DNA of 63,760 nt, counting the filler, from Ministeria vibrans ATCC 50519 (taxonomy: Eukaryota > Protista > Filasterea): the NCBI GenBank assembly GCA_943704425.1. It is 5 parts of 5 records of this genome, joined end to end, with 100 filler letters (N's around TTAATTAATTAA, not from the genome) between each part and the next. Parts side by side here need not be neighbours in the genome. Positions count along the whole stretch, not along the records: positions 23,225 to 49,101 come from CALSCP010000945.1; 4 more parts are not named here. One strand, written 5' to 3'. The translations under genes and the position numbers were made by a program. Below, in pieces: positions 26,577-48,929 of the stretch. The notes below the pieces were generated by a model. It was not told the origin of the DNA. It saw only the letters and a program-made list of their open reading frames with translations, and ran no database searches. Position 1 is the stretch's first letter; each line of letters begins with the position of its first letter.

Positions 26577-27810
26577 TTACTGTACCGAGAGTGAGTCAGA
26601 GCTTAGCGTAACGCACTGGACATCATTGAGAACTGAGGCACAAAAGACACGCGAGCGCACTGGCTCAAATGCAACGGCTGCGAGAGCTCTGCCTGCAAGT
26701 GACACGGATGCGATGAGGGGCGATTGCTCGTGTGTGGGTGGTGTGCAAGACGACCACAGAGCGACCGTGGAATCATTTCCACAGCTGATCAGTCGGTCTG
26801 CACTGCTCCACAGTACACTCGTCACTTTTTGGGTGTGCTGGCCCGTCAATGTTGCACAAGGTCCGTCACGTGCATTGCGACTATCGAAAATCAGAATCGA
26901 GTTGTCATCGCCACCCCCCGTTCCCGTCGCAATGTAGCGATGGCAGGGTGAGACAGCACAGCACGTCAAGAGCGTCTTTTGCACTGGGAACTCTATAGCA
27001 CTTGCAAGATTGTTGTGTCCGTCCAGAACGCGCAGACGTTTATCTTCGCTCGATTGCGCAACAGTGCTGTCACCGAACCACGCGAGACCCGTCACAATGT
27101 TGCGGGAAATCTCTCGTTTTGCTGTGCACTTTCCATTGCCTAAATTCCACATTTTTACACAGGCGTCACGTCCACCTGAGCACGCGATGTCTTGATGAGC
27201 ACACAAGCCGGTCACGGGCAATGTGTGCGCCGCATTCCACACTGTCTCAAGCGAGCAGTCCCTCACGTTGCCTTGATTGAGGCGGATGCAGCCGTCACGT
27301 CCACCAGACACAATTGTGTCTGCATCAGACCAAGCAATGCTGAAAACAATAGAGAGTCAGAACGCCGAGTGTGTCAAGGGAGATTCAATAGAAGGCGTAT
27401 GCTCACCTCGAAACACCGCGCTCGTGGCCCGACCAGTAGCGAAGAACCGTCAGTGACTCAACATCACTGACGCATATTCGCTAGGGAGAAGACTAATCTC
27501 ACTTCCAAGTTCCAAAAGTCAACCCGAGCGTCGACGTACTCTGCGTCAGACAGTCAGTCATACCTTATCATCGCCACCAGAAGCAAGAGATTCGCCAGAG
27601 ACAGCAAGGCAGTTGACCGCTTCGCCAGAATGGAGCGGTCGTCTAGGCAACCAAATGATTTGCAGTGAAAACGCATCGATTCCTCCTTCATTCTGCTTTC
27701 ATTTTTAGTCAAATCAGTCGTCTCTCTTCTCACTTATCAATAGATGTCGGTGGTTGTTCCACTATCTGATGTCTCTTCTCGATTGAACGTGTGGATGAGC
27801 ACAAACCCAT
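26577..27810 (-). CDS. WDR31: WD40-repeat protein, WDR31-like, with N-terminal MGLCSS lipidation motif (multi-exon)
   Basis: SGGDDK, SGGRD, ISRNIVTGLAW, QSSEDKRLR and EFPVQK resemble the WDR31 motifs as I recall them (SRNVVT/QTSEDKTLR/FPAKQ). First exon MGLCSSTRS at 27810; 5' exon boundaries are approximate. Confidence 0.7.
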
Positions 27811-28280: not shown

Positions 28281-29285
28281 TCATCTGACAAAGAGAGGAG
28301 AAGAGGCATCACGAGGAATTGTGCGACGAAGAGGAGAGCGAAGGGAAGGAGGAGAGGATATGGGGGAGGCAAGGCGGGCGTTAAGCGCGACGGAGTGGGA
28401 GGAGCCAACAGAAGAAGGAGCGGTGTAGAACGACTGGGCGTACGGCGAAGAGGCGCCCGAGTGGGAGGACGGAAGGGTGTCCATGTTGGCCAGAAGAGCC
28501 CGGCGACGCAGCACGGCGAAGGGGGCACGCGAGCTGGAAAACGATGCAACCGATGATGGCGCATTACTCCTGTTGTCGTTGTTGTCGTTGTTGTTGCTCT
28601 TGTGATGCTTCGATTTTTTCTTGTTGTGGTGTGAGTTTTCTTTGTTGAGGAGGGGTGTGAAGATCGTGCTGGCGTCCATGTCGCTCATCAGCGCGTTCTC
28701 GATGCCCTCCTCTTCCTCTTCGTCCGCCTCCTCCTCCCCATTGGCGGCTCCTGGACGACGTGAAAACGACACGTCGTCAGCAGTATAATACTCATCGTCA
28801 GTCGCGAGAGCGGAGTCGTTGTGCGGATTGGCGCCTGACTGTGACACGGAATCGCCAAACATCGAGTCGTCCAGCTCGCTGTCCATGGGATACGTCGTGT
28901 CCTCATCCGTGTTGAATGTGCCGATGTGACTGGTCGCTGGGGCGTCGTTGTCGGCCATGAGCGTCGCCGTGTCGAAACCGTCCTCGCTCTCAGCGCTGTC
29001 GTGTGCACTGTCAAGCGAGCGACGGACGTTGCCAAATGGGTGGAAATTCAACTGCATGCCTACAAAGGCTTCGGTACGTGTCGACATGACAGGCACTGCC
29101 CCTGCTGTTTCGTCTGCTGTTGGTCCGTGGCGCGGAATGATCGGTCGCACAAACTTGACGGGGGTTCGTTTGACGCCGGGCGAACGAGGGTCGCACAGGT
29201 TGGGGAACACTGCCGCCTCTGGTGCAGCAGCTTTACTCTGTACTGGGCTACTTGCCACGCCTTGCTTGCTCTCTTGTGCGCCCAT
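28281..29285 (-). CDS. CDCA3/Tome-1-like disordered protein (myristoylation motif, DPRSP..RTP, KEN box)
   Basis: MGAQESK start, CDPRSPGVKRTPV, TPLLNKENS and many S/T-P sites. Confidence 0.6.
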   Translation of the reverse strand: MGAQESKQGVASSPVQSKAAAPEAAVFPNLCDPRSPGVKRTPVKFVRPIIPRHGPTADETAGAVPVMSTRTEAFVGMQLNFHPFGNVRRSLDSAHDSAESEDGFDTATLMADNDAPATSHIGTFNTDEDTTYPMDSELDDSMFGDSVSQSGANPHNDSALATDDEYYTADDVSFSRRPGAANGEEEADEEEEEGIENALMSDMDASTIFTPLLNKENSHHNKKKSKHHKSNNNDNNDNRSNAPSSVASFSSSRAPFAVLRRRALLANMDTLPSSHSGASSPYAQSFYTAPSSVGSSHSVALNARLASPISSPPSLRSPLRRTIPRDASSPLFVR

Positions 29286-29857
29286 ACTTGGTTCTAAGAG
29301 CCAGAAAAAAAAAATCGACGTCAGTATTCGATTTGTTTGTTCCTGAAACAAAAACAACACTCCGTAAATCAGAGTTTCTCAGTCGAAATAGTATTTATTG
29401 TATGATTTTAAATGTCATAAACCCAAAGAGACGCTGTGAAGCGGGCAGAATTTTTCAGAATGAACACAAAGCAAAAAAAAAAGGGAAATAACAAAACTTG
29501 GTCCTTACTTGAAAAGATACTAGAACGAGGTTGGTTGTATATGAAGTAGTCGTCAAACCGTTCACTAGAACCAAAAGATTGAACGTCGGGAAATGGTAAA
29601 TGTCTGACGAGTGACGAGTGAACTCGGTGATCTAATTTGTATGAACTTCACCAAAACGTCCATCATTGACACAGAGCACGTCAATGGCTCACTCAAGTCT
29701 CAATGTTGTCGTCACTCGTTCGTCAACAAATGAGTCAGTCAGGACTCAAAAGTTTCTACCCAGACAATACGCTCTATACCGCTCTCTCCTGATCAAAGAT
29801 CGTGCTCAACTATTCAATCAGCTCACACTTTTTTATTTTTTTACATATCTCTTCACA

Positions 29858-31082: not shown

Positions 31083-34000
31083 CTACAGCTGTGAAGCTGA
31101 AGGGGCCATAATGTTCTTGCGCTGAAGATCAAGCACAGCGCCTAAATCACGAAGGGAGACACGATGTGCACGATTAACCCTACCCCCCATGAGACGATCA
31201 AGGGAGTCAGTGATGGTGGCAAGAGAGGGGCGACGACGAGGTTTGGCCGCCCAGCACTGCTGCATGAGTGCATAGACGGCAAGCGGGCAGCGCTCTGCGG
31301 GGCGACGTAGACGACCCCCTTCCCGCAGGAACGCCATAATGCGGTGTGCGTTGGTGTGGATCGCTCCGTACGGCACTTGCTTGCCTTCTCCCATAATCTC
31401 CCACAAAAGCACTCCTATTTAATTAAACCCAGCCCAAAAGAAGAACAAAAAAAAATTAAACAAAAAACTTATCATGTTTGCAACGCCATTACAGACGAGT
31501 ATTGTGCATACCAAATGACCAGACGTCAGTGGCAACGGTAAATGCGCGCGTGCGAATGACCTCAGGGGCCATCCAGGGCATGGACAGCTTCACCTTGTGG
31601 TGACTCCGCACGTACGTTCCATCTTCCACGTCCAGTGCGCGCGACAGCCCAAAGTCGGCTAGCTTCACGACAGTGCCAACACTCACAAGACAGTTGCGCG
31701 CCGCAATGTCACGATGCACAAAGTTCAGTGAGTGCAGGTAGGCCAAGCCCAGCGACACCTGGTGCGCCAGATCCAACAGCTCTGCGACGGCAATGCTTAC
31801 ACGCGCTGCTGCACAGTCGAGCAGGAAGTCGCGCAAGTTGCCATAGACACAGTGTTCGAGCACAATGAACAGCGGTGGTACCGAGTCTACCGACACGCCC
31901 AGTAGACCCAGTACATTCGGATGATCAAACTGCATCGTGATGTACGCCTCGCGCACAAACTCATGGTGTGCATAGTCGGGATCCACTCCCGTCGCTCGCA
32001 GCGTCTTGAGGGCCACAAAGCCATCGCGAATCAATGGATTGCCTGCGTCACTGCCATCCGTCACACGCGCCAGCCACACCTGCCCGTATTGTCCGTCGCC
32101 CAGTGCACTCAGTAGCGTCAGTGCCTCCCACTTGTAGTTGGGCGCACGGTGCACTGCACTCAGCATATTCGTCGTTGTCATCTTACTGTCGGCTGACTCG
32201 CTCTTGCGCTTGCGTCGCACACGCTCATCGTCGTCCGCCCCATCAGCTCCTTCCTCCTCCTCCTCCTCCTCCTCCCGCCCCGCTCCTTGTCCGCTCTGAG
32301 TCATTGCCGCCACAATCACCCGCGTCATCTGATCATCGAGTGCTGTAAACGTCGAAGAGGCCACACTCGCCCGATCGTCCTCCATCTCAGCCAACAGCCC
32401 TGTAGTTGTCGTCGCCACGGAAGCTGCTCCATCCACACTCTCCGAGTCCGAGTCGTCGGGGTCACTCTCGATAATGTCCCCTTCATCATCATCCTCCTCC
32501 TCCTCCTCCTCCTCTCTCTCTCCCTCCTCTTCGCCATCCAGTGCGGCATTCATATCAATCTCAATGGCACCCGCTCCGCCTGTTCTGCCTCCCATCAATG
32601 GTCGTATCAAAGACTCCACCTGACCCTCACCTTTGCTCCCTTTTTCGCGCTGTCGAAGCAACAACGGCGACGGGGACGACGACGACCCACGGCTCTCGAG
32701 CGCGCGTGCTGCACGCAATCGTGCCTGTTCTTCGCGTGTCAGCGCAGCCGTTGACGACGAGGGCGCAGTTGCCGCAGTCATCATGGTGGTCGCCGCTGCC
32801 GAGGCTGCTGCTACCGCTGTCGCTGTCGTGCCGGTCAGCGAGGCACGCGCAGCCAAAAGCGAATCGAGTTTCGCATTGAACGTGTCCTTGTCACTCTCGG
32901 CAATGGTTTTGTGCAGCTTGTTGCACGACCAGGTGGTAGAGCTCACCAGTGAGGCGCGTCGATGGGCACGATCAGCACCTGTTGCCACGAGTGACAAGTC
33001 AAACACGCGACAAGGTGTTATGCCGGCACGTGTGCACTCGGGACAGGGCAGTGTGTGGCGGTAGCGCACGCCGGGACAAACCGAGTGAAGAATATGCATC
33101 ACAGTCGCCACAATGGTCCCCAGACTGTCTACCGTCGGTGGCTGGTCCCTGTTGCCCCGCACCTCGATGCGCAACGCTCGATGGTACGTGTCGTTGGTGA
33201 GCAGCGCTCGCTCCACTCCATCGCCACCGCCATTGCTGTCCTTCTCCTTGACCGGCAGTGCTTTGCGCGACAGCAACACTCCGTTGGACCACACAAAGCG
33301 TTTGTGGTCGTGACACTCAATGAAGGGATGCAATCGCACAACAATGCGCGAAAAAACCTCGTCAGGTACGCCATCGTCGCCAAACTCAAAAATGCGCACA
33401 AGGGGCGACGCACCGCGTAGCTCCTCTTCCGAGGGCGACATATTCCATGGGAGATTGGCAGGCGCCTCAAAAGGCAGCAAATGAGGAATGAGAAGTCGAC
33501 TGTGCCGCAAGAATTGCGCACAACTCGAGAGTGGTCGTGTCGTCGCGGCGGACGATGACAAAAGCGATAGTGGAGTTGCTGGGCAATTGGTCGGTTGAAT
33601 GAGTTCGTAGACGGGCTCTTGGCCGTTGCTGGACCAAGGATCGTCGGGTGCGGGCGTGGTGGGTGCTGCGAGAGACTCGGCGGGTGCCACCGAGAAGGCA
33701 AGACCAAACGACTCGAGAAGGCTCGCCAGACGACAGCACACGCCAAAGGAGTAGCCCCACACACATTCGAGGTCGCTGTACGTTATGAGTCCGTCACGCA
33801 ACACCGGTTTGCTCACCGTCGAGCCCAGCGCGGCGGTGTCAGGCGCGAGCGTCAGGTCCACACTGGTGTCGCTGACACAAGCGGCACGGTGCAACTGGGC
33901 CATCACATCAACGGTGAGCCACTGCGGATCGATGACGACCACATCACCGAGACCTTCACGGTCAAAGAAGACACACTGACCCCAGTGCGAGAGCAACGAC

Positions 34001-37000
34001 AGTGCCCTTTGCATCTCTTGCATGTTCAGTTTAACATCGTGTCGCGACGCCACCAGCGACTGCACCTCCGTGACCGCAACCATTGGAATGCCTGTCGGGT
34101 CCGACGCAAGCTCGTTGCGCAGCCACACAATTACTTCCTCGACATACATCTGTGACATGGGCACAAGTTCCCCCATACTTGGTTGGGCGCGCGCCTGACT
34201 CACAATGAGATGACGCAGCCGATCCACGCCGTCCGCATAGCTTCGATTCAAGGCACACACCTCGGTCGCGATCACCGGTAGAGTCAGTCCAACTTTGCGA
34301 GCCGTCTCCAGCACAGCCTCGCGACGCGCCACAATGGCCGTGCGCGAGCTGCTCACACGATCCGCGTGAGTGCCCACCACAATAACCACTGCAGACGTGT
34401 CCACATCCTCTTGACGCACATGGTTCTTCACCGAACGCATCCAGTACTCGACACCCTCGAGACCCGATCGCATGTTTCCCGCACCCCCCAAGTGTACGCC
34501 AGTCGACGTCGAGCGGCGCAGCGTATTCACCATGGTCACGGGCTCGCCACAAAAAGACTCCGAGGCAACGCCGCCACCACCATTTCCCTCACAATCGTCT
34601 CCGTCCTCGCCATCCTCCGCCAGCTCGCCATCCACCATGGCCACAAGCGATACCGTGTCGCCATTGTCAACAACAACACCACGTGTGGCAACAGCAGCGG
34701 CATGCATTCTCGTGGCAGAGGGCGAGGAAGAAGGTGGGTCACGCGACTGGCGTCCTTCACCACCCGTCAAGTCATAGGTAACAACATAGACACAGCGATG
34801 ACTCAAGAAGAGCGGATGCGACACATAGTACTCATCACCGCCCGCAAAATCCCACACACTCAACTCCATTGTGCGTTGATTGGGCAGCGGGTCACCAATG
34901 CGAATGGACGATTCAAAGTCGGTGCGGGGCACACAGTCCCAGCGCCATTGATGCAAATCAATGCCGCACGTTTCGCTCTTGCGACTAAGTCTGTACAGCA
35001 GCAGAGCCCACTCGTCACGATGCGCCTCCGTTGCAAAGTACAACTCAATGTCACCGTCATGCGCAGTGTGCACCTGTACGCCATAGGGTTCGTCGTCGGG
35101 TGGCGCCGCACTCGAGTGGAATCGCTCAAACACAACCAGGTCTGTGGCTGTGCGTGGTGTACGACCCATTGCTTTGGTTGCTGCGCTTGCATTGGAACAT
35201 GGTCCCCCTGCTGTCGCTGCCATGGTTGCTGCCGATGATGATGGTGACGACGACGACGACGACGACGACGCAATGTTTTGGTAGGTCGACGACGTTGTGA
35301 ACGAGCCAGAAGTGGACACTGCAGGACTGTTGTTGCCGTTGCCCTGTGAACCCGCACTGTGAACAATGACACGAAGCTGGGCGCCCTCAAGATGAAACAA
35401 CTGTGGTGGTTTGGCGGGCTTCTTTTGGGATCGATTCGCCTGTGCCATGGCAGCAAGAGCACTAGCGGCGCTCGCGGCCGAGGCGGTAAGTTGTCCTGGC
35501 TCGGGATTGGACAGATTGCCGGTACCGTCGTCAAGGGGGCCGTCGGGATCATCGTGCAGGTGGTGCTGGTGCGGCGGCTGTTGATCAAATGTGTTCACAG
35601 AGGCATCGCTATAGGCGGTCATTTCGAGGGGATTAAACGTGACGGTGTCTTCAGTGTGGGTCGAAAAAAGACTGCCGCTGTTGCTGATCGAGTCGGGATC
35701 GCCAGGAGTGTGCAGTGGACGCGATGAGGCGCCGCGGGGCGGTCGAGCTGGCTGTGACTCGTACACGAGCAGGGATCGGTCGCGAGTAGCGCACCAGCGT
35801 GTCTGAGTCGTGATTGTCTCCCGGTGAAGCAGCTTGGAGCGATAGCGTTGACGGACCTGGACAAAGCCGTCGCGAGAGAGGAGCGCATCAACGAGGGTGG
35901 TTTTGCCAACTGCCTCGTAGCCCACCAGCACGACTTTGGTGCGGTACACATCAAGGAACTCGTGAGCCCACAGATCCCGAAAAAAGGCAAGGACCTTGTC
36001 GGCGCTATCGCGGAGCTCGCGTGGCACCGACTGGAGGCATTGGCAGCGGGCGAGGTGCAGGGTCGCGAGACTCTTGAGCGAGCCCAGTTGCATTGGGAGC
36101 ACACACAGCTCAGTGTTGCCCGACAGGTCAAGCTCTTTGAGACGCACAAGCCGTTCGATGGTCTCGGGCACCTGTGTGACGACGTTGTTGTCGACGTGGA
36201 GCACGCGCAGGTCGACAAGGAGGTCGGGCTCGCACACGAGTGGCTCGAGCGATGCAATGCGGTTGTGTCCCAACTTGAGTGTCTCGAGACAGGTGAGTGC
36301 AGTGATCTCACGGGGAACCGACGTCAGGCGGTTAAAGGAGAGATTGAGTTCAACAATGTGCGAAAAATCGGGCACAGTGAGGTAGGCGACGGGAAGTTGA
36401 CGCAGCGCGTTGCCTGACATGTTGAGTGAGATGATGCAACGTTCCATGGCACACTCGGCGCCGGACAGCACAAGCTTGCGCGTGTCGGCAAGTACTGTGG
36501 CAACGGGGGGCAGCTGTCCTTCATCGTCGACACGCAAACGTAGATTTGAGCAGGCGTACGAGAAGATGAGAATGCGAGCGGCCTCGTCTTCGGCGTCGAC
36601 AAGGTCGGCAGCATGGTCGCCGGCATGCGTCAAAAGATTGGGGTCGGCGCCCGACGTGAGCAGCGTCGTGATGGTGTCAACATGGCCCAGACGCGCCGCC
36701 CAGTGCAGTGCTGTGTAGCCATTGGCGTCGGGGCGGTCAATGTCTGCGCCATACGAGAGGAGCATTTCGACCGAGTTGACCATGCCTTTGCTGGCGGCCC
36801 AGTGCAAGCGCGTCTGGCCCTGTGTCGACTCGTACACTCGGTTGATGTCGGCGCCCAGCGAAATGAGCGTCTCCACAGCACGCGAGTCGAGTTGCACAAG
36901 GGCCCGTCGGAACATGTCGAGGGCGTTACGCGTGACATTGTCGGCGGCCACCTGAAAAGCTGTCTCACCAGCAGCATTGGGGGTTTCCGACGGCACTCCG

Positions 37001-37570
37001 TAGCTCACGAGCAACGACGCCGTCGTCGCCTGGCCGGCTCTGGCTGCCACATGCAAAACCGTGTCGCCTGGGTATTCAACGCCGGGAAGAGCGCCCTAAA
37101 CAAGAGAGAATTCGATGAGTTTTTGTGTCACCCCAAAAAACATTAATTATTGTGCGCTCGACCGAAAGTGCCGCGAGCCCAAACTTGTCGTAGAGAGCTC
37201 GGAGTTCGCCGTCGTCTCCTGCACGCGCGGCCACAATAAGTTCCTCGACGGCCAGGCGAAAGGACAAGTCGGGAGCCATGCGAGGACGCGCGTAGAGGTC
37301 GTCGTCGTCGTCGTCGTCGTTGTTGTTGTCGCGCGCGTCGTTGGCGTCTCTGTTGCGGCCGTCGCTGGCTTCATCCAGGTCGCTGTCGTCGCTGTCCACA
37401 TGCTCGTACGCAAGACGCACAGCGGGCGTCAACGTGGCATGCGCAGGGACGGCGAGCGAGCCTCGGCGGGGCTGTGGCAGCGGAGGCGGACGAGTCGAGG
37501 AGAACGACGACTGAGCCACAGCCACCGCCGCTCGGAGGTCGCCGCCGCCGGCCTTTGGCACGTCTGACAT
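31083..37570 (-). CDS. Roco protein: ANK-LRR-ROC (PH domain inserted)-COR-tyrosine kinase (3 exons)
   Basis: Ankyrin repeats (GYTALHWAA) and LRRs; ROC GYEAVGKT/TCGID/WDFAG/VGTHAD; COR IDPQWL, FSRIVVRL, WSNG; kinase GDGQYG, VALK, HRDIAARN, DFG, WMAPE, DVWSFG-VLLWEI. Confidence 0.9.
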
Positions 37571-37862
37571 GCAACAATATATTACCAAAAATAATTCACA
37601 GCCGCAAAAAAAAGAAAGATAGTGATAAGTGATTATGTCAATAGTTTAACTCAACTCATCGTTTAAAACATTTTAAAATCTTACATTATCTTTACTTACT
37701 TCTTCTTCTTCTTCTTTTTCTTCTTCTTCTTCTGCCTGACACGATGGATCGACAGAATAGAGTAGGCGGACGCACTGGAGGTGAGTNNNNNNNCCAATCT
37801 TACATTATCTTTACTTACTTCTTCTTCTTCTTCTTTTTCTTCTTCTTCTTCTGCCTGACACG

Positions 37863-39089: not shown

Positions 39090-39160
39090 CATGCATATGA
39101 CCAAAAGAGAAGAAAAAAAAGAGTATAGAGAGACAGTGTACTATGAAACAAGACTTTTTT

Positions 39161-42100
39161 TTACATGAGATGTTGTGTCTTCTTGCGTGACACTGTGAAG
39201 AGATGCTCTCCTTCCACCAACGGTCTTGCATCTGCTGCTTGCTGTTCCTCTTCGACGCCAAAGAGGAATGTGTAGTGTGCTTCCATTTCGCGAATGGCTC
39301 GTTCCTCCAGCTGGATCAGTGCGAGCGATCGTTTGTCTTTGTGTGCGCGCAATCGGTGTTCCTATATACTCTAATGGCGTTAGGAGAGAAGTGGAGACAC
39401 ACCAGAAGAGCGTCTCTGATACCTTTTCCTGTTCGGCCAGAATGCGTGCGATCGGGGGTGTGGGTGCAGCAGAAGAGGGTGAAGGGGCAGCCCACGGGAC
39501 ACCGCTGCGTAGCCTACTCGGACTGGTGCTGCTCGCGGTGGTGGTAGTAGTAGTGGTAGTGCGTTTTGAGTTGACGGTGCGTTGTGAGGGGGAAGAAGAT
39601 AGGAGGGAGCGCAGTGAGGGCCCCGTGACGCCTGGTGGTGATGCGACGCCACTCCACGGGGCTGTTGATGTGGTGGTTTGGTGGGATTGGTACTCTGACA
39701 GAGCGATGGGCTTTGGTTTGCTAGCATGACGAGGAGAAGAGCGGGCGGAAGAAGGTCGTTGCTGTGGCTGCTGCTGCTGTTGCTGAGCTGCCATTATATC
39801 TTTGAGAGAGGAATTTGGTCTGGAAGGTCTGGAAGAGAGAAGAGGGGCCGGCGTCGGTGAAGCGGCTGCCTTCGTCCAGGTGGGCACATTATCATAATGG
39901 GTTTGTGTCGTGCATACGACTTCAAGATTCGACTTGCGCTGTCTGCGCTTGTCCTTTTTTGCCGCACGTTTGCTCTGTGCTCGCCCGTTCCCTTGAAAAA
40001 GATCAATTTCTTCACGCATCACCCTCACTTGTTCCACTTTCGCTTCTTCTTCCACTCCATCTCTTTGTTCCACTTTCGCTTCTTCTGCTCTTTCCCCGTT
40101 CGCTGCGTCGTCCACTCCATCTCTTTGTTCCACCTTCGCTTCTTCTGCTCTTTCTCCGTTCGCTGCGTCGTCCACTCCATCTCTTTGTTCCACATTCGCT
40201 TTTTCTTCCACTTCTTCTGCCCTTTCTCCATTCACCGCGTCTACCACTTCTTCCGCTCCTCCTTCGTGTTCCTCAATATGCTCCACATCCAAGCTTACAC
40301 TATCTGTCGTCCGTCGCTGTCTCCGCCCTCTTCCTCCCACGGAGGGCGCAACAATAGGAACACCCACAAGCCTTCGCACGTGCGGCTCAATCTCATTGCG
40401 GAATATTTCACAGGGAAGCTGTGTCATTGCACCACTCTCTATCATCCAGCCACTATGAAACGCAATGCACACACAACATCTCTCCTACAACAACCGCACA
40501 TTTTTAACAAGCATTTTCCTCTTCTCAAACAAAACGGAATGTACCAGTAAGTGATAGAATCCGTGAAACTCGGCAAGGTGAGTCAGGGAAACAACGTTGG
40601 CGAGGTCGAGTCGCGTGGCCAGGGCCGACTGGGCGGCGTGTGAGAGGGACTCGAGACAGAGCGACTGGGCGGCGACAGCGACGTGGGTGGTCTCGGCAAC
40701 AGAGAGGGTGTCGAAGAGGGACGTGGTGGCGTCGGTGTAGAGGTGGGCAAGCACAGTGTGCGCCGTGATGCTTGTGGGAGGCTCAGGAAAGCTCACAGTG
40801 GTAGTGGTGGCGTCGGAGAAGGACGACATGAAGAGGGCGCGAAAGTAGTCGCAACGCGCGACCAGCACAGCGCGATGACAAGGAACAAAAGAGTCGCTGC
40901 TGCTCTTGCTGCTACTATTGCTGTTACTGTTGCTGACGCGAATGGACACGTCGGTGGGCGGAACAGAAGGAAGGGTCAAAGGATAGAGAAGTGACGCGGA
41001 AAATGGTGGAGTGCAGCGGTAGGCGAGTGAGGAAGAGCGGAGAAACTCGAGGGCTTCAAGCACTTGTGCACTAAAAGTGATGCTCTCGTCAACCTCATCC
41101 GAATAAACAATGCGCAATGCAAGTCGTACAGTCGTCGCGTCCGTTTGAGGGAAATCAATAAAGAGGGAAGGCAGAGCAATGCCGCGAGAGGCGAGCACAA
41201 TGGCGTGTGCAGCGACACGCTCTCCTGCAGCACACGTAAAGGTCACGTCACAGATCCCATCACCGACAAAAGACTCGTCAAGAAGCCGTGCAAGATCGAT
41301 TGCAAGCGTCACCAAGCTCGCTTCCGAGTCGTCTTTGTCTACCGTCGTGACAGATGGTGGTGGAGACGCGTCGCCCAACGCGAAAAAAGTGAGTCCACGC
41401 GGGTCGGCCGAGAGCCGCGAGAGATGGTAGGCGAGAGGCATGCGACGAAGCGGCGCGAAAGAAGAAGAGGCAAGGGAGAGTGAGAAGAGAAATCCATCGT
41501 GAGCAGACACAACAAGTAGAACATTGCTCGCATGATCACACCAGGCGATGTCGGCAGCGCGCACCTCGCGATGAGACGCAAGAAGAGGGACATGGCGAGC
41601 ACTGCTTCCCTCAATGGGCGACCACACATAGAGCAAACCAACGGCCGAGACCACTGCGACTTCAACGTGGGCCGAGGCGCGACAGAGAATACGTCGAGGT
41701 GGGAACACGTCGGGTTTGACGGCGGACTCGGAACGATGCACGGAGAAGGAGGTAGGGAAAAGCTGCAGGGGGGGGATAAAGGATGTGCAAGTGTGGCCAT
41801 GGAGCACAAGTACACTGCCGGACTCGAGTGCAACAGCGGTGCACAGATCGCTGACGGAGAGTGCGCTAATGCGGTGGCGATGTTCGTTGACGTAGGAGAC
41901 GACGCGAAAGGTGGTGGAGACGGGGGAGTCGGAGCGGTGGCCGAGCTGGCCGACATTGCGCCCACACGTGTAAAGGTGGGTGCGCGAGCAGACCGCCGAG
42001 TGGATCTTACTGGCGGCCGCTGCAAACATCTTGGAGGTACCGGGGAGTCGCACAAGACGCGGCGTGGCGACCGTGCTTGACTTGCTGCTGCTTGAGCGGG

Positions 42101-43232
42101 GTCGAGTAGGAGAGGGACGGTCGAGTAGCGGTGAGTCAAACACGTGGCTGGTGCCAGCGAGAGGCACGTCGGGCAAACCAAGCTGCCCGTCACTTTGAGT
42201 GCCCCATGTATACACATCGCCATTGTCGAGCACTGCAATGGAGTGATGAAGTCCCGCCGCAACAGACACGACCGTGTGCTGTCGTGGGAAGGAGCGCACA
42301 CGCTCGGGCACAAGCGACGACGTCTCCTCGGTGTCTACGCCGAGACGACCTCCCCTTCCGTAGCCGCACGCGTACACGCGGCCGCGCGCCGATCGAAACA
42401 GCACGTGGTAGTCGGCGGCACTTACCTCCACGATGGAATCATCGTCGTGCATGTGACTGCGTGAGAAGGCATCCACCAACTCTGCGTGGGGTTTGTCGCG
42501 GTCCGTTCGACCATGACCCAACGTGAGATTGGCACTTGAGCCCCAGCTAAAGACCGACGTGGCTCTGGTGTGCACACGCGTCTGTTTTCTCTTGTCCGTG
42601 TCGCTGTGGTCGTCACTGTCGCTGCCATTGTCCACGCTGACTGCGCCGAGGCACTGTGCACTCTGGACAGCAAGCAAGTCGGACGGACGCAGTCCCTCGC
42701 CATCAAGCGCATTCAAGTCGGCTCCAGACTCAATAAGAACCATGGCTGTCTGCAGCTGTCCGTGGTACAGTGCTCGGTGGAGCGGCGTGTAGGCGGACTC
42801 GGCATCCTACTCAGAGTGAATTGCGCAAGAATCAAAACAATCACAGGGGAGAGCAAAAAAAATGCTTCGATTCTTCAAAGGAGACGGCACAAGGGCCAAG
42901 GGTGCGTCGTAATGAAGACGCCCGACCAAGGGAGTTGCTGCTTGGACGTACTTTGGCGTTGATGGCGGCTCCTTGCGCGATCAACAGTTGCACAATGGCC
43001 GTCTCGCCGAATGAGGCTGCACAGTGCAAAAGCGTCCGTCCCATTCGATCTCGCATGGTCACGAGGCTGTTGTGCAGTGGGGAGCGCAAGTGTGAGAGAT
43101 CACAAGTGGAAAACTCCAAAATCGAACTCCAAAATGAAACGAAACTAACCACTGCCGTCTTTTCAGAGCACCCTTTAAATGATCCACATCTCCTCGTGCA
43201 ACTGACTCGGCAAGTTCGGTGAGGGTGTTCAT
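39161..43232 (-). CDS. IBTK: Inhibitor of Bruton tyrosine kinase-like protein (ANK-RCC1-BTB-BTB), multi-exon
   Basis: Ankyrin GRTLLHCAA and YTPLHRALYHG; RCC1 FSWG...TLGH and GYGRGGRLG; two BTB domains (AHAIVLASR, CHRAVLVARCDYF); C-terminal SLALIQLEERAI. Confidence 0.88.
40030..40250 (-). repeat. ~60-bp coding tandem repeat in the IBTK C-terminal region
   Basis: EQRDGVDDAANGERAEEAKV repeated about 3 times. Confidence 0.85.
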
Positions 43233-43310: not shown

Positions 43311-46300
43311 ATGCTCGATCAGGTCTTAGAAGCGGTAGCGGTCGCGACGGGCCCGGCATGGAGCAACGAGCAGCGTCTGGAAGCGTACAACGTGCTTCAG
43401 CAGTTTCAGGAGACGTGTTCGGTCGAGATGGCGTTTCAGACAGCGCTGAGCATTCTCGCGCCGAGCACGGGAGATGGCGGGGCGCCGTCGTACGACGACC
43501 AGGCGCGGCACTATGCGTTGCATTTGCTGGACACGTGCATCCGCTTTCGCTGGAACACCGACCTGTCGCTCGACGACAAGGAACGTGCAAAGAGCCTGTC
43601 GCTGCACCTCTTGAAACACGTTGCCGCGTCGTGTGCCGAAGCGCGCTTTATCCGCGAGAAGCTCGCCGAGCTTGTCGTGCAGATTGCCGTGCGTGAATGG
43701 CCCCAGCGATGGCCGTCGCTCTTGCCCGATTTGCGTTTTATTGCTGACAATGGCAGTGCCGTCCATCTTGAACTTGTGCTTCTTTTCTTTCGGGCTCTCT
43801 TCGATTCGCTGACGCCGTTGCCTCCCTCGCGTCGTCGCGATATGCTCACCACGCTGGCGGAACAGGCTGATAATGTGACTGGCTTTATTGCATCCGTACT
43901 TCAGCGAACCATTGCCGTGTTGCCGTCCGACGAACGCGACATCATGCTCGTGGCAATGGCCGCCCTCGAAGCGGTCGCCTCGGTCGCCACCTGGATTCCG
44001 GCCAGCACCCACGGCACCTCGGACCTGATCCTTGCCACCGTACAGCTCATTCATGTGCACGAGGCCCACTGTGAACTGGCGACGCGCGCGTGTGAGTCCC
44101 TCTTGGTGTTTGTCGAGCGGAAATTTACTCACGGTGAAACACTCGTGCTCGACTGTCTGTGGCAGACGCTCGACGGTATCCACGCGCTCTTTAACGAAGT
44201 ATCCGCACACGTGGTGAACCTCCTACAACTGCGTGTGCCTCTTACTCAGCTTGAGACGCCCTACCTGCTGCTAAAGCGCGTCTCCCAACTCATCGCCGAA
44301 ATCGGCGCCTCGCAAGTGTGTTCGCAGTGCGAGCGACTCGCCGACACGCCGCCTGCCCAGCTGCCCGCCTACCTTGACTTGCTTCTCAAGGTCTCCGCTG
44401 TTCCCAGCACCACCACAGATCAGCTAGTCTTCTTGGCTTGGTGCGAAATGGAGAGTCGCCCCGCTCTCGCGCGCGTGCCCGCCTTCAAGGAGGCCATGCC
44501 CCATCTACTTCGCTGTGCCATTGCCAAGGCGCTGCCACGCGAACCGTACGACGAGAACGCTCTTGACCAAATCGACTACGACTCTGAAGAGACCATGCAC
44601 GACCAGCACAGCACGTACAACTCTATCGTCCACCGCACCCTTCGCGCCGTCGCGAAGCACGCGCCAAAGGAATGTGTGGCTCTCGTCAGCGAAGCATTTG
44701 ATGGCGAAATCACAATGGTTGCGCAGCTCGCCGCTGCTGCCGCTGCTGCCGCTGCCGACTCCGAGTCGACCGCTTCTGCCGCTGTTGCTGCACTAAATCG
44801 AGCGGCAGACCGTCTCGAGGCGTGTGCAAAGGCGGCGTCGTCAGCTCTCTCGGCCGCCACCACCAGTGCGCTCTTCCGCCTCTCGCCCCTTCCTGACGAA
44901 ATTATCACACCTGTACGTCAGCTCTGTTTGGACCTTGCGCGCACCGCCACGACTGCAGCGGCATCGCGCACTCTCGTGGCCGGACACATGAGTGCCCTTG
45001 GCGCATTGGCACCCTTGCTCATTCATGTGCCAGACACGCTTGCGCCAGTAGTTGCGGCTCTCTTTGACGGCGTCGTCTTTTTGCGTCAGTCTGGTGGCTG
45101 TGATATTGCGGCGTCGCTTGATGAGGGTGATATCGAGATGCGAGTGCGTCTGGTGCAGCGCATTGCGTGCACGAGTCTCATCAAGGTGTGCGAACAAGCT
45201 GCGTCCGCACTTCTCACTTGTTTCGACATTCTTCTCGAGCCCGTGCGCAATATGCTCACGTCCAATCTTGTCACGTACTACCAACGTTCATTTCTCTTTG
45301 AGGCCCTTGTCATTGTGGCCAATGCAGCCGGCGACAGCGAGCAGCAGTGCGACTTTCTCGCGTCCATCTCTGAACATGTTATTGTCGAACTAACCACCGA
45401 CGAGGACATTTTGGCGCTTCTCGAGGGCCCCGCTGCCTTTGCCGCTGCCCTCGACATTGGCATGCAGTCGTCATCGTCGTCAATGACTGCCCAGACGAAC
45501 ACTGCCGCCATCTTCACCGCCAGCTCACTGCAACTTCGTCGCAAACTTCACGGCATTCTCAACACAGTTGCTGGCATTCTGCGTCGCGCCCACCGCAAGC
45601 GAACGCCTCTTCACCTGCAACACCAACAACCTCATCAACACTCATCCGACTTGACGGGTGCCTCCTCTACAGCCACCACCACGACGACGATGACGACGGC
45701 CGCTACGACAGCCTCGGGCACCGACAGTGCATCTGAGGCATCGCTGTCGTTTGTCGATGAACCCGCCGCGCCCTTGGCCTTTGCCACCCTCCAAAATTGC
45801 CTTCGTCTTGCCACGGTTCTTGACGAGCTGTTCACGCCCGACGGTCGCCAACTTGTCCCGCCCCATCTGCAACGTGCGGTGTTTCATCCGAGTGACCCTG
45901 AAATCCGCATGCTTCTTGCGCTCCCCACGCTTCCATCCGTACCCGCACAGACACCGGAAGCACAACTGTCGCGCCTCTCCATCTTCCTCACCATGCTGCG
46001 CGAGACTCTCTCGCTCTGTATCACACACAGTCTTGTGGCAGCTCCGTCGCTCTTCCGCTCGCCCGACGCCATGGACGCGCTCGCCCCGACTCTACTGGCC
46101 CCGACTCTCTCGGGCGACTTTCGTCATGTCAAGCTTCTTCTGCGCGGTCCCTTTCAGTCGCTTATGACATCGTGCCCACCCGACGCCCGTCTCGCCGCCC
46201 TTGAGCCTATCCTGCCCGGTCTCATCTCCACTGTTTTTACGCACCTCGACTCGGAGTGGCGCAAATGGTCCGACGAGCAACTGGCCGCGTGCACAGCACC

Positions 46301-47350
46301 CGGTGCCGACGAATCGTTTGACGCGGCGGCCGCCGACGCCACCTCCACCGACGATCTCACCGATGTGCTTAGGCAACGCCTTTGGCGCGACACAGCTCGC
46401 GAGTTTGTCCACGCTCTCTACCGACTCCTCTCCGACACGCGCTACAGTGGCAATGCCCTCCGTGACGATCCCAATGCGCGTCCTCTCTCCGATCTGGGTC
46501 GCTTTATCATGCAGACTCCCGTAAGCAACAGGAAAATTTAACATAATTATTCTCTATCTCTATCATATATACAGTTTCTTTCCCCCTCCTTTCTCTCACA
46601 CACACTTTTTTTTTCCTCCCTTCCCTCTCAATTCTCAATCTCAATAATTCTCTATTTTTCTCTTTCTCTCTCTTTTTTGATGTAGAAAATTGGTACGGTC
46701 GTCATGGAAAGTGTGGGTGAAATGCTATTGTGGCCCGACTCGCGCGTGTGTCTGCGCGCCGTTGACTCAGCCATGGTCCTCCTCGATTCGGTGCGCCTCC
46801 CGGCCTACCATACCTTTGTTGGTGCCACCCTCTTTTCTTATGCCATCCAGGTATCATAGTTCTCGTCTTTATTATGATTGCTGATATCACCTCTTTATCG
46901 TGTTAGGCGCTGAGTGTCAATGGGCAGCACGACGAGTGCCAAGCACATCTTGTAGCCATGATCTGGCACGCGTATAAGGTATTTGATGGGCTCGTCGAGA
47001 GTGGCGAAGCGCCTGAACATCTCCCGCGCGGTGTGCTCCTATCGCTGCCTGGCTCCAACGAGGCAGCTCTCGTGGACTTTGAGGCGTCATTGAGGCGCAC
47101 CACAAAGGACAAGCGGCAGCGCGAACTTTTCAAGACTGCCCTGCACGACCTCATTCGCGTGTCGTACGCCGAGCAGCACAACCGTGAGCACTCGGCCAAG
47201 ACAGTGCAGGCGCTACCCGAGACAGTCGTGCGCATGAAAGTACGTCGCAAGCAAGAGAGTGTGTGGGAGGCCGAGGCTAATGGCGCAAGCATGGGCGATG
47301 GTGATTCGCCCGTTGCCGGTATTGTCGATCTCTTTGCAGACGACGGTTGA
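43311..47350 (+). CDS. XPO5: Exportin-5-like karyopherin (3 exons)
   Basis: RHYALHLL..CIRFRWN, FIREKLAELVVQIAVREWPQRWP, LFEALV, LLWPDS, LSVNGQH, K.QR..FK. Confidence 0.85.

Positions 47351-47468: not shown

Positions 47469-48929
<1,461 letters not shown>

What the first reader, a model, noticed from the sequence alone, without database searches (positions are those of the whole stretch)
31083..37570. LRRK-like Roco protein whose kinase is a true tyrosine kinase
Seen: ANK-LRR-ROC-COR-kinase order as in LRRK1/2, but the catalytic loop is HRDIAARN, with WMAPE, DVWSFGVLLWE and a Tyr in the activation loop (DGTY). Established: HRD(L/I)AARN marks tyrosine kinases, whereas LRRK and Dictyostelium Roco kinases are TKL/Ser-Thr type. 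Inference: an independent fusion producing a GTPase-gated cytoplasmic tyrosine kinase, a signalling design I do not recall being described.
Basis: partly seen in the sequence, partly recalled or inferred. Interest (0 to 1): 0.85.

Follow-up and report, generated by a model that had tools for sequence, protein, structure and literature searches.

The report
Roco GTPase fused to tyrosine kinase
An expressed gene of a marine protist encodes an LRRK-like ANK-LRR-Roc-COR protein whose kinase belongs to the tyrosine-kinase group, not the LRRK type: a domain combination I found nowhere else, though its enzyme activity is untested.

Summary
A three-exon gene on the minus strand (31083-37570, 2107 codons) encodes ANK, LRR, Roc, COR-A, COR-B and a kinase with HRDIAARN, DFG, WMAPE and an activation-loop Tyr. 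RNA contigs of two runs splice out both introns exactly.

The kinase is of the tyrosine-kinase (TK) group. The best 60 solved structures for each kinase exon are all TKs. TK domains score 120-143 bits, TKL-type loops at most 75, and an LRRK2-like kinase 22. In a tree the kinase sits in the AAR-loop clade (99/96), sister (95/88) to choanoflagellate HMTK-type kinases. A clade with Roco/LRRK kinases is rejected (AU p 0.0012).

"True tyrosine kinase" remains inferred. The kinase keeps the alphaE His typical of Ser/Thr kinases and lacks the usual P+1 Pro. A position just outside the crown TKs is not rejected (p 0.095).

"GTPase-gated" is also unproven: about 285 low-complexity residues separate COR-B from the kinase.

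Roc carries a conserved insert between the P-loop helix and switch I. It is shared with stand-alone metagenomic Roc-COR proteins, and on one of them it folds as a PH domain (Z 10.5).

No other Roc-COR plus TK protein turned up among the best hits of 1.84 billion representative proteins, in a metagenome scan, or in the papers held. Verdict: new variant of a known kind.

The parts
31083..37570 (-). Whole coding region of the gene (3 exons, 2107 codons plus stop)
   Evidence: ORFs and translations; splice joints in RNA contigs
37163..37570 (-). Exon 1: start codon, acidic low-complexity N-terminus, first ANK-like repeat
   Evidence: the phase-0 donor GTCGAG is confirmed by the joint 37094>37162 (cut +1) in X5
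37096..37162 (-). Intron 1, 67 nt, GT..AG, AT-rich
   Evidence: Skipped in RNA contig X5 record 18, kept in DNA runs X1 and X3; ends checked
31512..37095 (-). Exon 2, 5584 nt: ANK, LRR, Roc, COR-A, COR-B, linker, and kinase subdomains I-IX
   Evidence: One uninterrupted frame with even GC/GC3; Pfam
31415..31511 (-). Intron 2, 97 nt, GT..AG, inside the kinase between DVWSFG and VLLWE
   Evidence: Skipped in RNA contigs of X5 and X16, kept in X1 and X3; sequence
31083..31414 (-). Exon 3: kinase subdomains IX-XI, short tail, stop codon
   Evidence: Pfam PK_Tyr_Ser-Thr profile positions 193-258; the best PDB matches are all TKs
36577..37262 (-). Ankyrin repeats (interrupted by intron 1)
   Evidence: Ank_2 1.7e-20, Ank 6.1e-18; GDTVLHVAARAGQ read across the confirmed splice
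36007..36444 (-). Leucine-rich repeats
   Evidence: LRR_4 1.8e-11, LRR_8 2.5e-10, LRR_14 1.3e-9
34177..35949 (-). Roc G domain, about 595 residues because of two inserts
   Evidence: Pfam Roc 4.7e-10. G motifs seen in the alignments with P0242, P0316, P0130 and P0127: P-loop GYEAVGKT 35899-35922; switch I SETCGID; DFAG 34840-34851; THAD 34360-34371
34981..35877 (-). Insert between the P-loop helix and switch I: a conserved PH-like module stretched to about 300 residues by low-complexity loops
   Evidence: Conserved columns shared with P0242 and P0316. The homologous 94-residue module of P0242 models at pLDDT 72 with six strands and a C-terminal helix. Its best matches are all PH domains (Foldseek TM 0.6-0.69; VIA Z up to 10.5). 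In the window protein itself, Pfam PH reaches only E 0.046
34462..34755 (-). Second Roc insert (after switch II), low complexity, absent from P0242 and P0316
   Evidence: Alignment; it holds 3 of the 7 non-synonymous strain differences
33682..34122 (-). COR-A
   Evidence: Pfam COR-A 1.8e-7 (below the curated cut-off); phmmer 71 bits to COR of P0242
32992..33369 (-). COR-B
   Evidence: Pfam COR-B 8.4e-12
32137..32991 (-). Linker of about 285 residues, rich in Ala/Thr/Ser and Glu/Asp, no domain
   Evidence: Translation; no Pfam hit even at E 10; read contigs break at its two poly-Glu repeats, 32240-32287 and 32476-32529
31200..32118 (-). Protein kinase domain of the TK group (interrupted by intron 2)
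   Evidence: Catalytic loop HRDIAARN 31693-31716; activation-loop Tyr 31612-31614. Pfam; PDB ranking; per-domain scores; tree; AU test

Best explanation
Shown: one expressed, spliced gene encodes a 2107-residue protein with no transmembrane segment. Its order is ANK repeats, LRR, a Roc G domain with intact G1-G4 motifs, COR-A/COR-B, a roughly 285-residue acidic low-complexity linker, and a C-terminal kinase. The kinase belongs to the tyrosine-kinase group, is sister to the choanoflagellate HMTK family, and has every catalytic residue. Roc carries a module between the P-loop helix and switch I that is homologous to a PH-fold insert in stand-alone Roc-COR proteins. The kinase does not descend from the Roco/LRRK kinase lineage, so a Roco scaffold and a TK domain were joined independently of LRRK.

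Inferred mechanism: Roc-COR acts as it does in other Roco proteins, as a nucleotide-dependent dimerisation and conformational switch. Here it would control how close two tethered TK domains come, so that they phosphorylate each other on the activation-loop Tyr (EDGTY), much as receptor dimerisation activates receptor TKs. ANK and LRR would recruit partners or substrates. The PH-like insert beside switch I would couple a membrane or ligand cue to the GTPase cycle.
For: Gene model and expression. Domains.

TK-group membership:
- The best 60 PDB sequences are all TKs for exon 2 (FAK 132 bits, Abl, ROS) and for exon 3 (FGFR4, EphA2, TYRO3, Fes, ALK).
- All named long homologues are TKs, at about 40-48% identity (FAK, ROS, ABL, ALK, MET, Capsaspora TKs).
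- Per-domain phmmer scores are 120-143 bits for AAR-loop domains, at most 75 for K-loop (TKL-type) domains, 51-52 for dictyostelid Roco kinases and 22 for an LRRK2-like kinase.
- In the maximum-likelihood tree the AAR-loop clade including the query has support 99/96, and the query is sister to HMD-loop kinases of Salpingoeca infusionum, S. punica and Didymoeca costata at 95/88.
- The AU test rejects a clade of the query with Roco/LRRK kinases (p 0.0012).
- The AAR motif and the activation-segment Trp are the published TK-specific constraints (PMC8662651), and both are present.
- HMTK1, a member of the sister family, is a proven tyrosine kinase (PMC3082566).

Catalytic residues (GxGxxG, VALK, alphaC Glu, HRD, Asn, DFG, APE). 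Roc motifs and insert. The Roc-COR is closest to the family with the PH-like insert (COR 71 bits to P0242, against at most 15 to LRRK or dictyostelid Roco). Constraint: the strain differences are 7 synonymous and 7 non-synonymous, and all those in the kinase and COR-B are synonymous.
Against: No biochemistry exists. The kinase keeps the alphaE His that TKs normally lost: 12 of 267 AAR-type loops have it, against 24 of 34 K-type loops. Regaining that His is linked to Ser/Thr activity in Lmr kinases (PMC8662651). The P+1 Pro of the TK consensus P-[IV]-[KR]-W is replaced (LSMPW). A tree with the query just outside the other TKs is not rejected (AU p 0.095). My TKL reference set lacks MLK, RAF, LISK and RIPK proper.

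The long disordered linker argues against the tight COR-B/kinase packing that, to my knowledge, underlies Roc-kinase coupling in LRRK2. RNA and DNA contigs all break at the poly-Glu repeats of the linker, so no single read-derived contig links COR to the kinase. COR-A is below Pfam's curated cut-off. The PH fold was modelled on a homologue, not on the window protein. No orthologue with this architecture was found, so conservation cannot vouch for function.
Confidence: 0.6

Rival explanations
1. The kinase is in the TK lineage but is dual-specific or mainly a Ser/Thr kinase, as reported for the Lmr/LMTK family. The protein would then work like an ordinary Roco Ser/Thr kinase that happens to be built with a TK-derived domain.
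For: The alphaE His is retained (YLHS), as in 24 of 34 K-loop kinases but only 12 of 267 AAR-loop ones. PMC8662651 links the regained His to Ser/Thr activity in Lmr. The P+1 Pro is displaced. A position just outside the crown TKs is not rejected (p 0.095).
Against: AAR and the P+1 Trp, the two published TK-specific constraints, are intact (PMC8662651). Sister HMTK-type kinases show the same P+1 change and sometimes the His (P0279, P0298), yet HMTK1 phosphorylates tyrosine (PMC3082566).
Confidence: 0.2
2. The GTPase does not gate the kinase. Roc-COR, ANK and LRR serve only as a scaffold, localisation or oligomerisation module, and the kinase, tethered by a long flexible linker, is regulated on its own.
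For: About 285 low-complexity residues with no domain lie between COR-B and the kinase. Choanoflagellate TKs commonly carry accessory domains thought to recruit substrates rather than to regulate (PMC3082566).
Against: Nothing tested here speaks against it. The intact G motifs and the conserved insert next to switch I suggest a working switch, but not what it controls.
Confidence: 0.3
3. The kinase is a TKL (Ser/Thr-type) domain that acquired HRDIAARN by convergence.
For: WMAPE, DVWSFG and CW..P..RP also occur in TKLs. The alphaE His and the LAYLHSLN stretch resemble K-loop kinases. My TKL sampling is limited.
Against: There is a gap of about 50-100 bits between TK and TKL-type matches. The TK clade has 99/96 support, and the query lies inside a starred subclade with Capsaspora and choanoflagellate TKs. 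The best PDB matches of both exons are all TKs.
Confidence: 0.05
4. The fusion is an artefact: a mis-join of two genes at poly-Glu repeats, or two separate transcripts from one locus.
For: All short-read contigs, DNA and RNA, break at 32240-32287 and 32476-32529 in the linker. The RNA contig over the kinase has a higher mean depth than those upstream (381 against 45 and 27 in X5), although depth per contig is not comparable.
Against: The frame stays open from ANK to the kinase N-lobe, with coding-like GC/GC3 throughout and no AT-rich intergenic stretch. Four independent runs from 2011-2025 give collinear pieces, including the 188-nt piece between the two repeats. No start-like context or 5' end was seen before the kinase.
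Confidence: 0.06

Closest known systems
LRRK1 / LRRK2 (animal Roco kinases)
   Same: ANK-LRR-Roc-COR-kinase order in one cytoplasmic polypeptide. The language-model feature search puts LRRK1 clusters first (0.87). The Roc motifs are of the Roco type (DFAG, THAD).
   Different: The kinase is of the TK group, not TKL/LRRK (22 bits to an LRRK2-like kinase; AU p 0.0012 against a common clade). There is a PH-like insert in Roc and a roughly 285-residue linker between COR-B and the kinase. There is no C-terminal WD40 and no armadillo region.
Dictyostelid Roco kinases (P0130 from Dictyostelium firmibasis, P0304 from Acytostelium subglobosum)
   Same: LRR-Roc-COR-kinase core; protist Roco proteins with varied accessory domains.
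   Different: Their kinases have HRDLKSPN loops and lie outside the TK clade. They score 51-52 bits to the query kinase and at most 15 bits to its COR.
Choanoflagellate HMTK family (for example M. brevicollis HMTK1, PMC3082566)
   Same: Sister group of the kinase domain (95/88). Both lose the P+1 Pro (L-S/A-x-x-W). Both are cytoplasmic TKs with domain partners unknown in animals.
   Different: HMTKs have HMD in place of HRD and carry PTB and/or SH2 domains (P0253: PID plus SH2). This protein keeps HRD and carries ANK-LRR-Roc-COR instead.
Focal adhesion kinase (best solved-structure match)
   Same: HRDIAARN, the KL..WMAPE context, and an activation-loop Tyr at the aligned position; 132 bits.
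   Different: No FERM or FAT domains. In the tree FAK is not the nearest family.
Stand-alone Roc-COR proteins with a PH-like insert (P0242 on L005, P0316 on L008, P0280 on L009; metagenomes)
   Same: Closest Roc-COR relatives. They have the same insert between the P-loop helix and switch I, with invariant positions.
   Different: They are 540-710 residues long, with no ANK, LRR or kinase. No kinase is called in what the short contigs hold, and downstream of P0242 lies a convergent gene. Their insert is compact (about 95 residues).

Membership tests
Roco family | A Roc G domain immediately followed by a COR domain | tested here: met
   Pfam Roc 4.7e-10, COR-A 1.8e-7 (31.6 bits, under the curated 35.3) and COR-B 8.4e-12, in that order; COR scores 71 bits to P0242
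Roco family | Roco-type nucleotide-binding motifs (GxxxxGKT, DxxG, [NT][KH]xD) | tested here: met
   GYEAVGKT, switch I Thr in SETCGID, DFAG and THAD align with P0130, P0127 and P0242
Roco family | GTP binding and hydrolysis | not testable with these tools
   Needs protein
LRRK family (TKL group) | The kinase domain groups with LRRK/Roco TKL kinases and has an HRDLK/YRDLK loop | tested here: not met
   The loop is HRDIAARN; 22 bits to an LRRK2-like kinase; AU test p 0.0012 against a common clade
LRRK family (TKL group) | Kinase directly after COR-B; C-terminal WD40 (LRRK2) | tested here: not met
   A roughly 285-residue linker; the protein ends about 40 residues after the kinase; no WD40 hit
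Tyrosine kinase group | Catalytic-loop AAR (or RAA) motif and the activation-segment Trp, given as TK-specific constraints in PMC8662651 | tested here: met
   HRDIAARN and MPWMAPE
Tyrosine kinase group | Phylogenetic placement within the TK clade | tested here: met
   Clade support 99/96; the query lies inside a starred subclade (96/90). Caveats: a position just outside is not rejected (p 0.095), and the TKL sampling is limited
Tyrosine kinase group | P+1 loop consensus P-[IV]-[KR]-W | tested here: not met
   K-L-S-M-P-W; the Pro column holds Ser, as in the HMTK-type relatives (S/A)
Tyrosine kinase group | Loss of the alphaE His typical of Ser/Thr kinases (PMC8662651) | tested here: not met
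   LAYLHSLN keeps the His; only 12 of 267 AAR-type loops among the homologues do
Tyrosine kinase group | Phosphorylates tyrosine | not testable with these tools
   Needs an enzyme assay
HMTK family (choanoflagellates) | HMD replaces HRD in the catalytic loop (PMC3082566) | tested here: not met
   HRD is kept. Sister group, not a member
PH domain (Roc insert) | Seven-stranded beta sandwich capped by a C-terminal helix | tested here: inconclusive
   Met for the homologous module of P0242 (pLDDT 72; VIA Z 10.5, rmsd 2.6 over 89 of 94 residues; the top 50 are all PH-superfold). For the window protein it is inferred only from shared conserved columns and a Pfam PH hit at E 0.046. The model of Roc plus insert was poor across the insert

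The most novel reading that the evidence does not exclude
This is a signalling design not described before: a Roco-type G-protein switch, itself fitted with a PH-like sensor beside switch I, that directly controls a genuine tyrosine kinase in one polypeptide. It would have arisen independently of LRRK in a close unicellular relative of animals. It would be a natural experiment on how Roc-COR communicates with a kinase of a different group.
Probability: 0.25. Interest if true: 0.75.

Novelty: new variant of a known kind. Interest (0 to 1): 0.55.

Why it matters
A natural Roco protein with a kinase of another group offers a test. If nucleotide state still controls that kinase, the coupling is generic, for example through dimerisation. 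If not, it depends on the specific COR-B/kinase interface.

The gene also adds a G-protein input to the list of ways in which unicellular relatives of animals wired tyrosine kinases before receptor signalling became dominant.

The PH-like module inserted next to switch I defines an unnoticed subfamily of Roc domains.

The value is limited by three things: the gene was found in one organism only, nothing is known of its activity, and unusual TK domain combinations are already expected in this lineage.

Tried and rejected
- The word-index search with LRR-Roc-COR returned mostly LRR proteins and only distant Roco proteins.
- The word-index search with the neighbouring exportin-5 gave nothing, so it did not name the organism.
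- Exact look-ups of two neighbouring ORFs found no record.
- Run and organism names are coded. I considered Salpingoeca rosetta and Acanthamoeba castellanii from indirect hints. Acanthamoeba is unlikely: it has 6.2 introns per gene (PMC4053784), whereas these genes are intron-poor. S. rosetta could not be confirmed: the one candidate I checked in its supplementary tables, PTSG_05587, is a receptor-type TK and not this gene.
- The metagenome scan with COR-linker-kinase found only kinase-level matches at 25-41% identity, and no COR match.
- The M. brevicollis kinome paper (PMC2453073) is not held, so I could not check whether it lists such an architecture.
- PDB sequence search with Roc-COR gave only non-significant hits, to entries 3DPT and 3DPU ('Rab family protein'; E 0.2-0.5).
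- An alternative first intron (donor GTGACA at 37131, acceptor at 37068) was considered and rejected by the RNA joint.
- Retained in-frame introns in the low-complexity stretches were rejected by composition and by the unspliced RNA contigs there.
- The model of the whole Roc plus insert was too poor across the insert to place it relative to the G domain.
- Rfam found nothing in the piece.
- Not done, by instruction: the joined spliced protein was never built for a search or a fold. The exons were searched apart, and the tree uses only the exon-2 part of the kinase (209 residues).
- No complex prediction was run, because no protein-protein binding is claimed.
Full report
**1. What is in the sequence**

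One ORF of 1855 codons (31489-37056) holds ankyrin repeats, LRRs, Roc, COR-A, COR-B and the first two thirds of a protein kinase. The flanking ORFs supply the N-terminus (37076-37588) and the kinase C-lobe (31083-31412).

Reading the DNA gives two GT..AG introns. Intron 1 is 37096-37162 (67 nt, phase 0). Intron 2 is 31415-31511 (97 nt), inside the Gly codon of DVWSFG|VLLWE. Laying public runs on 31300-37290 confirmed both: contigs of two RNA runs (X5, X16) skip exactly these stretches, while two DNA runs (X1, X3) keep them.

No other joint was seen. GC and GC3 are even across the 5.6-kb exon, so the long low-complexity stretches are part of the mRNA. The product has 2107 residues and no transmembrane segment.

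By instruction I did not build the joined product for any search or fold. The exons were analysed apart.

**2. The kinase**

All catalytic elements are present: GDGQYG, VALK, the alphaC Glu, HRDIAARN, DFGLSR, EDGTY, WMAPE, DVWSFG and CW..P..RP. Several independent lines place it in the tyrosine-kinase (TK) group.

- The 60 best solved-structure sequences are all TKs, both for the exon-2 part (FAK 132 bits, the Src-Abl ancestor, Abl, ROS) and for the exon-3 part (FGFR4, EphA2, TYRO3, Fes, ROS, ALK).
- Among long proteins of the 5.8-billion collection, all named hits are TKs at 40-48% identity: FAK, ROS, ABL, ALK, MET, Eph, FGFR and Capsaspora TKs.
- In my local rescoring of every protein fetched, domains with an AAR loop score 120-143 bits. 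The best K-loop (TKL-type) domains score at most 75, dictyostelid Roco kinases 51-52, and an amphioxus LRRK2-like kinase 22.
- A maximum-likelihood tree (54 domains, 203 columns, LG+C20) puts the query inside the AAR-loop clade (99/96). It lies within a starred subclade with Capsaspora and choanoflagellate TKs (96/90). It is sister (95/88) to four kinases with an HMD catalytic loop from Salpingoeca infusionum, S. punica, Didymoeca costata and a metagenome. HMD is the hallmark of the choanoflagellate HMTK family, whose member HMTK1 is a proven tyrosine kinase (PMC3082566).
- The AU test rejects a clade of the query with the Roco/LRRK kinases (delta lnL 57.5, p 0.0012).

There are caveats. A tree with the query just outside all other TKs is not rejected (p 0.095). 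My TKL references are Roco/LRRK kinases, plant RLKs and six K-loop metagenome or transcriptome proteins, and do not include MLK, RAF or LISK proper.

Two TK hallmarks are not met. The P+1 Pro is replaced (KLSMPW; the HMTK-type relatives also have S or A at that column). The alphaE His typical of Ser/Thr kinases is retained: 12 of 267 AAR-type loops have it, against 24 of 34 K-type loops. PMC8662651 names AAR and the activation-segment Trp as the TK-specific constraints, and both are present here. The same paper links a regained alphaE His to Ser/Thr activity in Lmr kinases.

So "TK group" is well supported, and "phosphorylates only tyrosine" is an inference.

**3. The GTPase half**

Roc has GYEAVGKT, a switch I Thr (SETCGID), DFAG and THAD. 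These align with dictyostelid Roco, an LRRK2-like protein and metagenomic Roc-COR proteins. COR-B is clear (8.4e-12), while COR-A is below Pfam's curated cut-off.

The closest Roc-COR relatives are not LRRKs. They are three stand-alone Roc-COR proteins from metagenomes: P0242, P0316 and P0280. COR scores 71, 36+30 and 45+19 bits to them, against at most 15 for LRRK or dictyostelid Roco. No kinase is called in what their short contigs hold, and P0242 is followed by a convergent gene.

Two of them (P0242 and P0316) share with the window protein a module inserted between the P-loop helix and switch I. It has invariant positions: G, F.L.G..L..Y, Y, D.W, R. Modelled alone, the 94-residue module of P0242 reaches pLDDT 72, with six strands and a C-terminal helix. 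Its structural matches are uniformly PH domains: Foldseek TM 0.6-0.69, and VIA-align Z up to 10.5 to the DAPP1 PH domain, with all 50 best hits of the PH superfold.

In the window protein the same module is stretched to about 300 residues by Ser-, Ala- and Pro-rich loops, and Pfam PH reaches only E 0.046. A second low-complexity insert, of about 100 residues, follows switch II and is specific to this protein.

**4. How the halves are joined**

Between COR-B and the kinase lie about 285 residues of Ala/Thr/Ser and poly-Glu/Asp with no domain. To my knowledge, in LRRK2 the kinase abuts COR-B, so a tight LRRK2-like interface cannot be assumed here.

All short-read contigs, RNA and DNA, break at the two poly-Glu repeats. 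The physical link therefore rests on three things: the assembled window, the open frame, and collinear pieces in four runs from 2011-2025. I rate an artefact or a separate kinase transcript as unlikely (about 0.06), but it has not been excluded.

**5. Is it under constraint?**

The runs differ from the window at 14 positions: 7 synonymous and 7 non-synonymous. Both differences in the kinase and the one in COR-B are synonymous. Six of the non-synonymous ones lie in Roc, all within or close beside its two inserts, and one lies in a COR-A loop. The numbers are small, but they fit a functional gene with relaxed loops.

**6. Is it unique?**

A full HMMER pass of Roc (second half)-COR-linker-kinase over 1.84 billion representatives listed 150 best hits, with a cut-off of about 118 bits. 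Rescoring them showed that only one has both Roc/COR and a kinase: an Acytostelium Roco with a TKL loop. A Roc-COR protein with a TK-like kinase should have scored well above that cut-off.

The library does contain choanoflagellate transcriptomes. However, such assemblies could break in low-complexity linkers, and the window's own protein is itself not in the libraries. A metagenome scan found no COR match.

Eight full-text searches brought up no description of a Roc-COR protein with a tyrosine-kinase domain. The M. brevicollis kinome paper is not held, so a silent listing in a kinome table cannot be excluded.

**7. The organism**

Names are coded. The stretch is held by runs of several labels and by algae and seawater metagenomes. 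The kinase's sister group is choanoflagellate. The neighbouring genes are ordinary eukaryotic ones: RCC1-BTB, exportin-5, a MutS domain V gene and a WD40 gene.

I infer a marine unicellular holozoan, probably a choanoflagellate, but did not prove it.

**8. Verdict**

It is a real, expressed Roco protein whose kinase comes from the TK group through a fusion independent of LRRK.

Its tyrosine specificity and its control by the GTPase remain hypotheses. My preferred mechanism is nucleotide-dependent dimerisation of Roc-COR driving trans-autophosphorylation of the tethered TK, with the PH-like insert as an input.

Because unusual TK architectures are already a known feature of choanoflagellates (PMC3082566), I rate it a new variant of a known kind, of moderate to good interest.

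Noticed in passing
window 34981-35877 (-); L005 811-1092; L008 215-496: A subfamily of Roc domains carries a PH-fold module inserted between the P-loop helix and switch I. It occurs here and in stand-alone metagenomic Roc-COR proteins (P0242, P0316). I know of no description of a PH domain inside a Roc G domain.
   Followed up: partly
window 31300-32475 versus 32530-37290: In RNA run X5 the contig over the kinase and the 3' end has a mean word depth of 381, against 45 and 27 for the two upstream contigs (11 against about 4 in X16). That contig runs about 1 kb beyond 31300, so the cause may be 3' bias, an overlapping neighbour transcript or an internal start. Depth per contig cannot decide.
   Followed up: no
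window 33415-35166: Twelve of the 14 differences between sequencing runs fall in this 1.75-kb stretch (Roc inserts to COR-A), including all 7 non-synonymous ones. The kinase has only 2, both synonymous.
   Followed up: partly
window 40488-42743 (-), 43311-46538 (+), 47818-48489 (-), 26580-27311 (-): The neighbours are ordinary eukaryotic genes in long, intron-poor ORFs: an RCC1-repeat plus BTB protein, an exportin-5 family protein, a MutS domain V fragment and a WD40 protein. The exportin-5 ORF found no relative at all through the word-index search.
   Followed up: partly
window 39144-40472 (-) and 28284-29360 (-): Two long ORFs (443 and 359 codons) flanking the gene have no Pfam match. They were not examined further.
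   Followed up: no
L009 1128-1838 and 3447-4597: The Roc-COR protein P0280 is flanked by overlapping or adjacent same-strand ORFs without Pfam hits. The called gene may be a piece of a longer, intron-containing or frameshifted gene.
   Followed up: no
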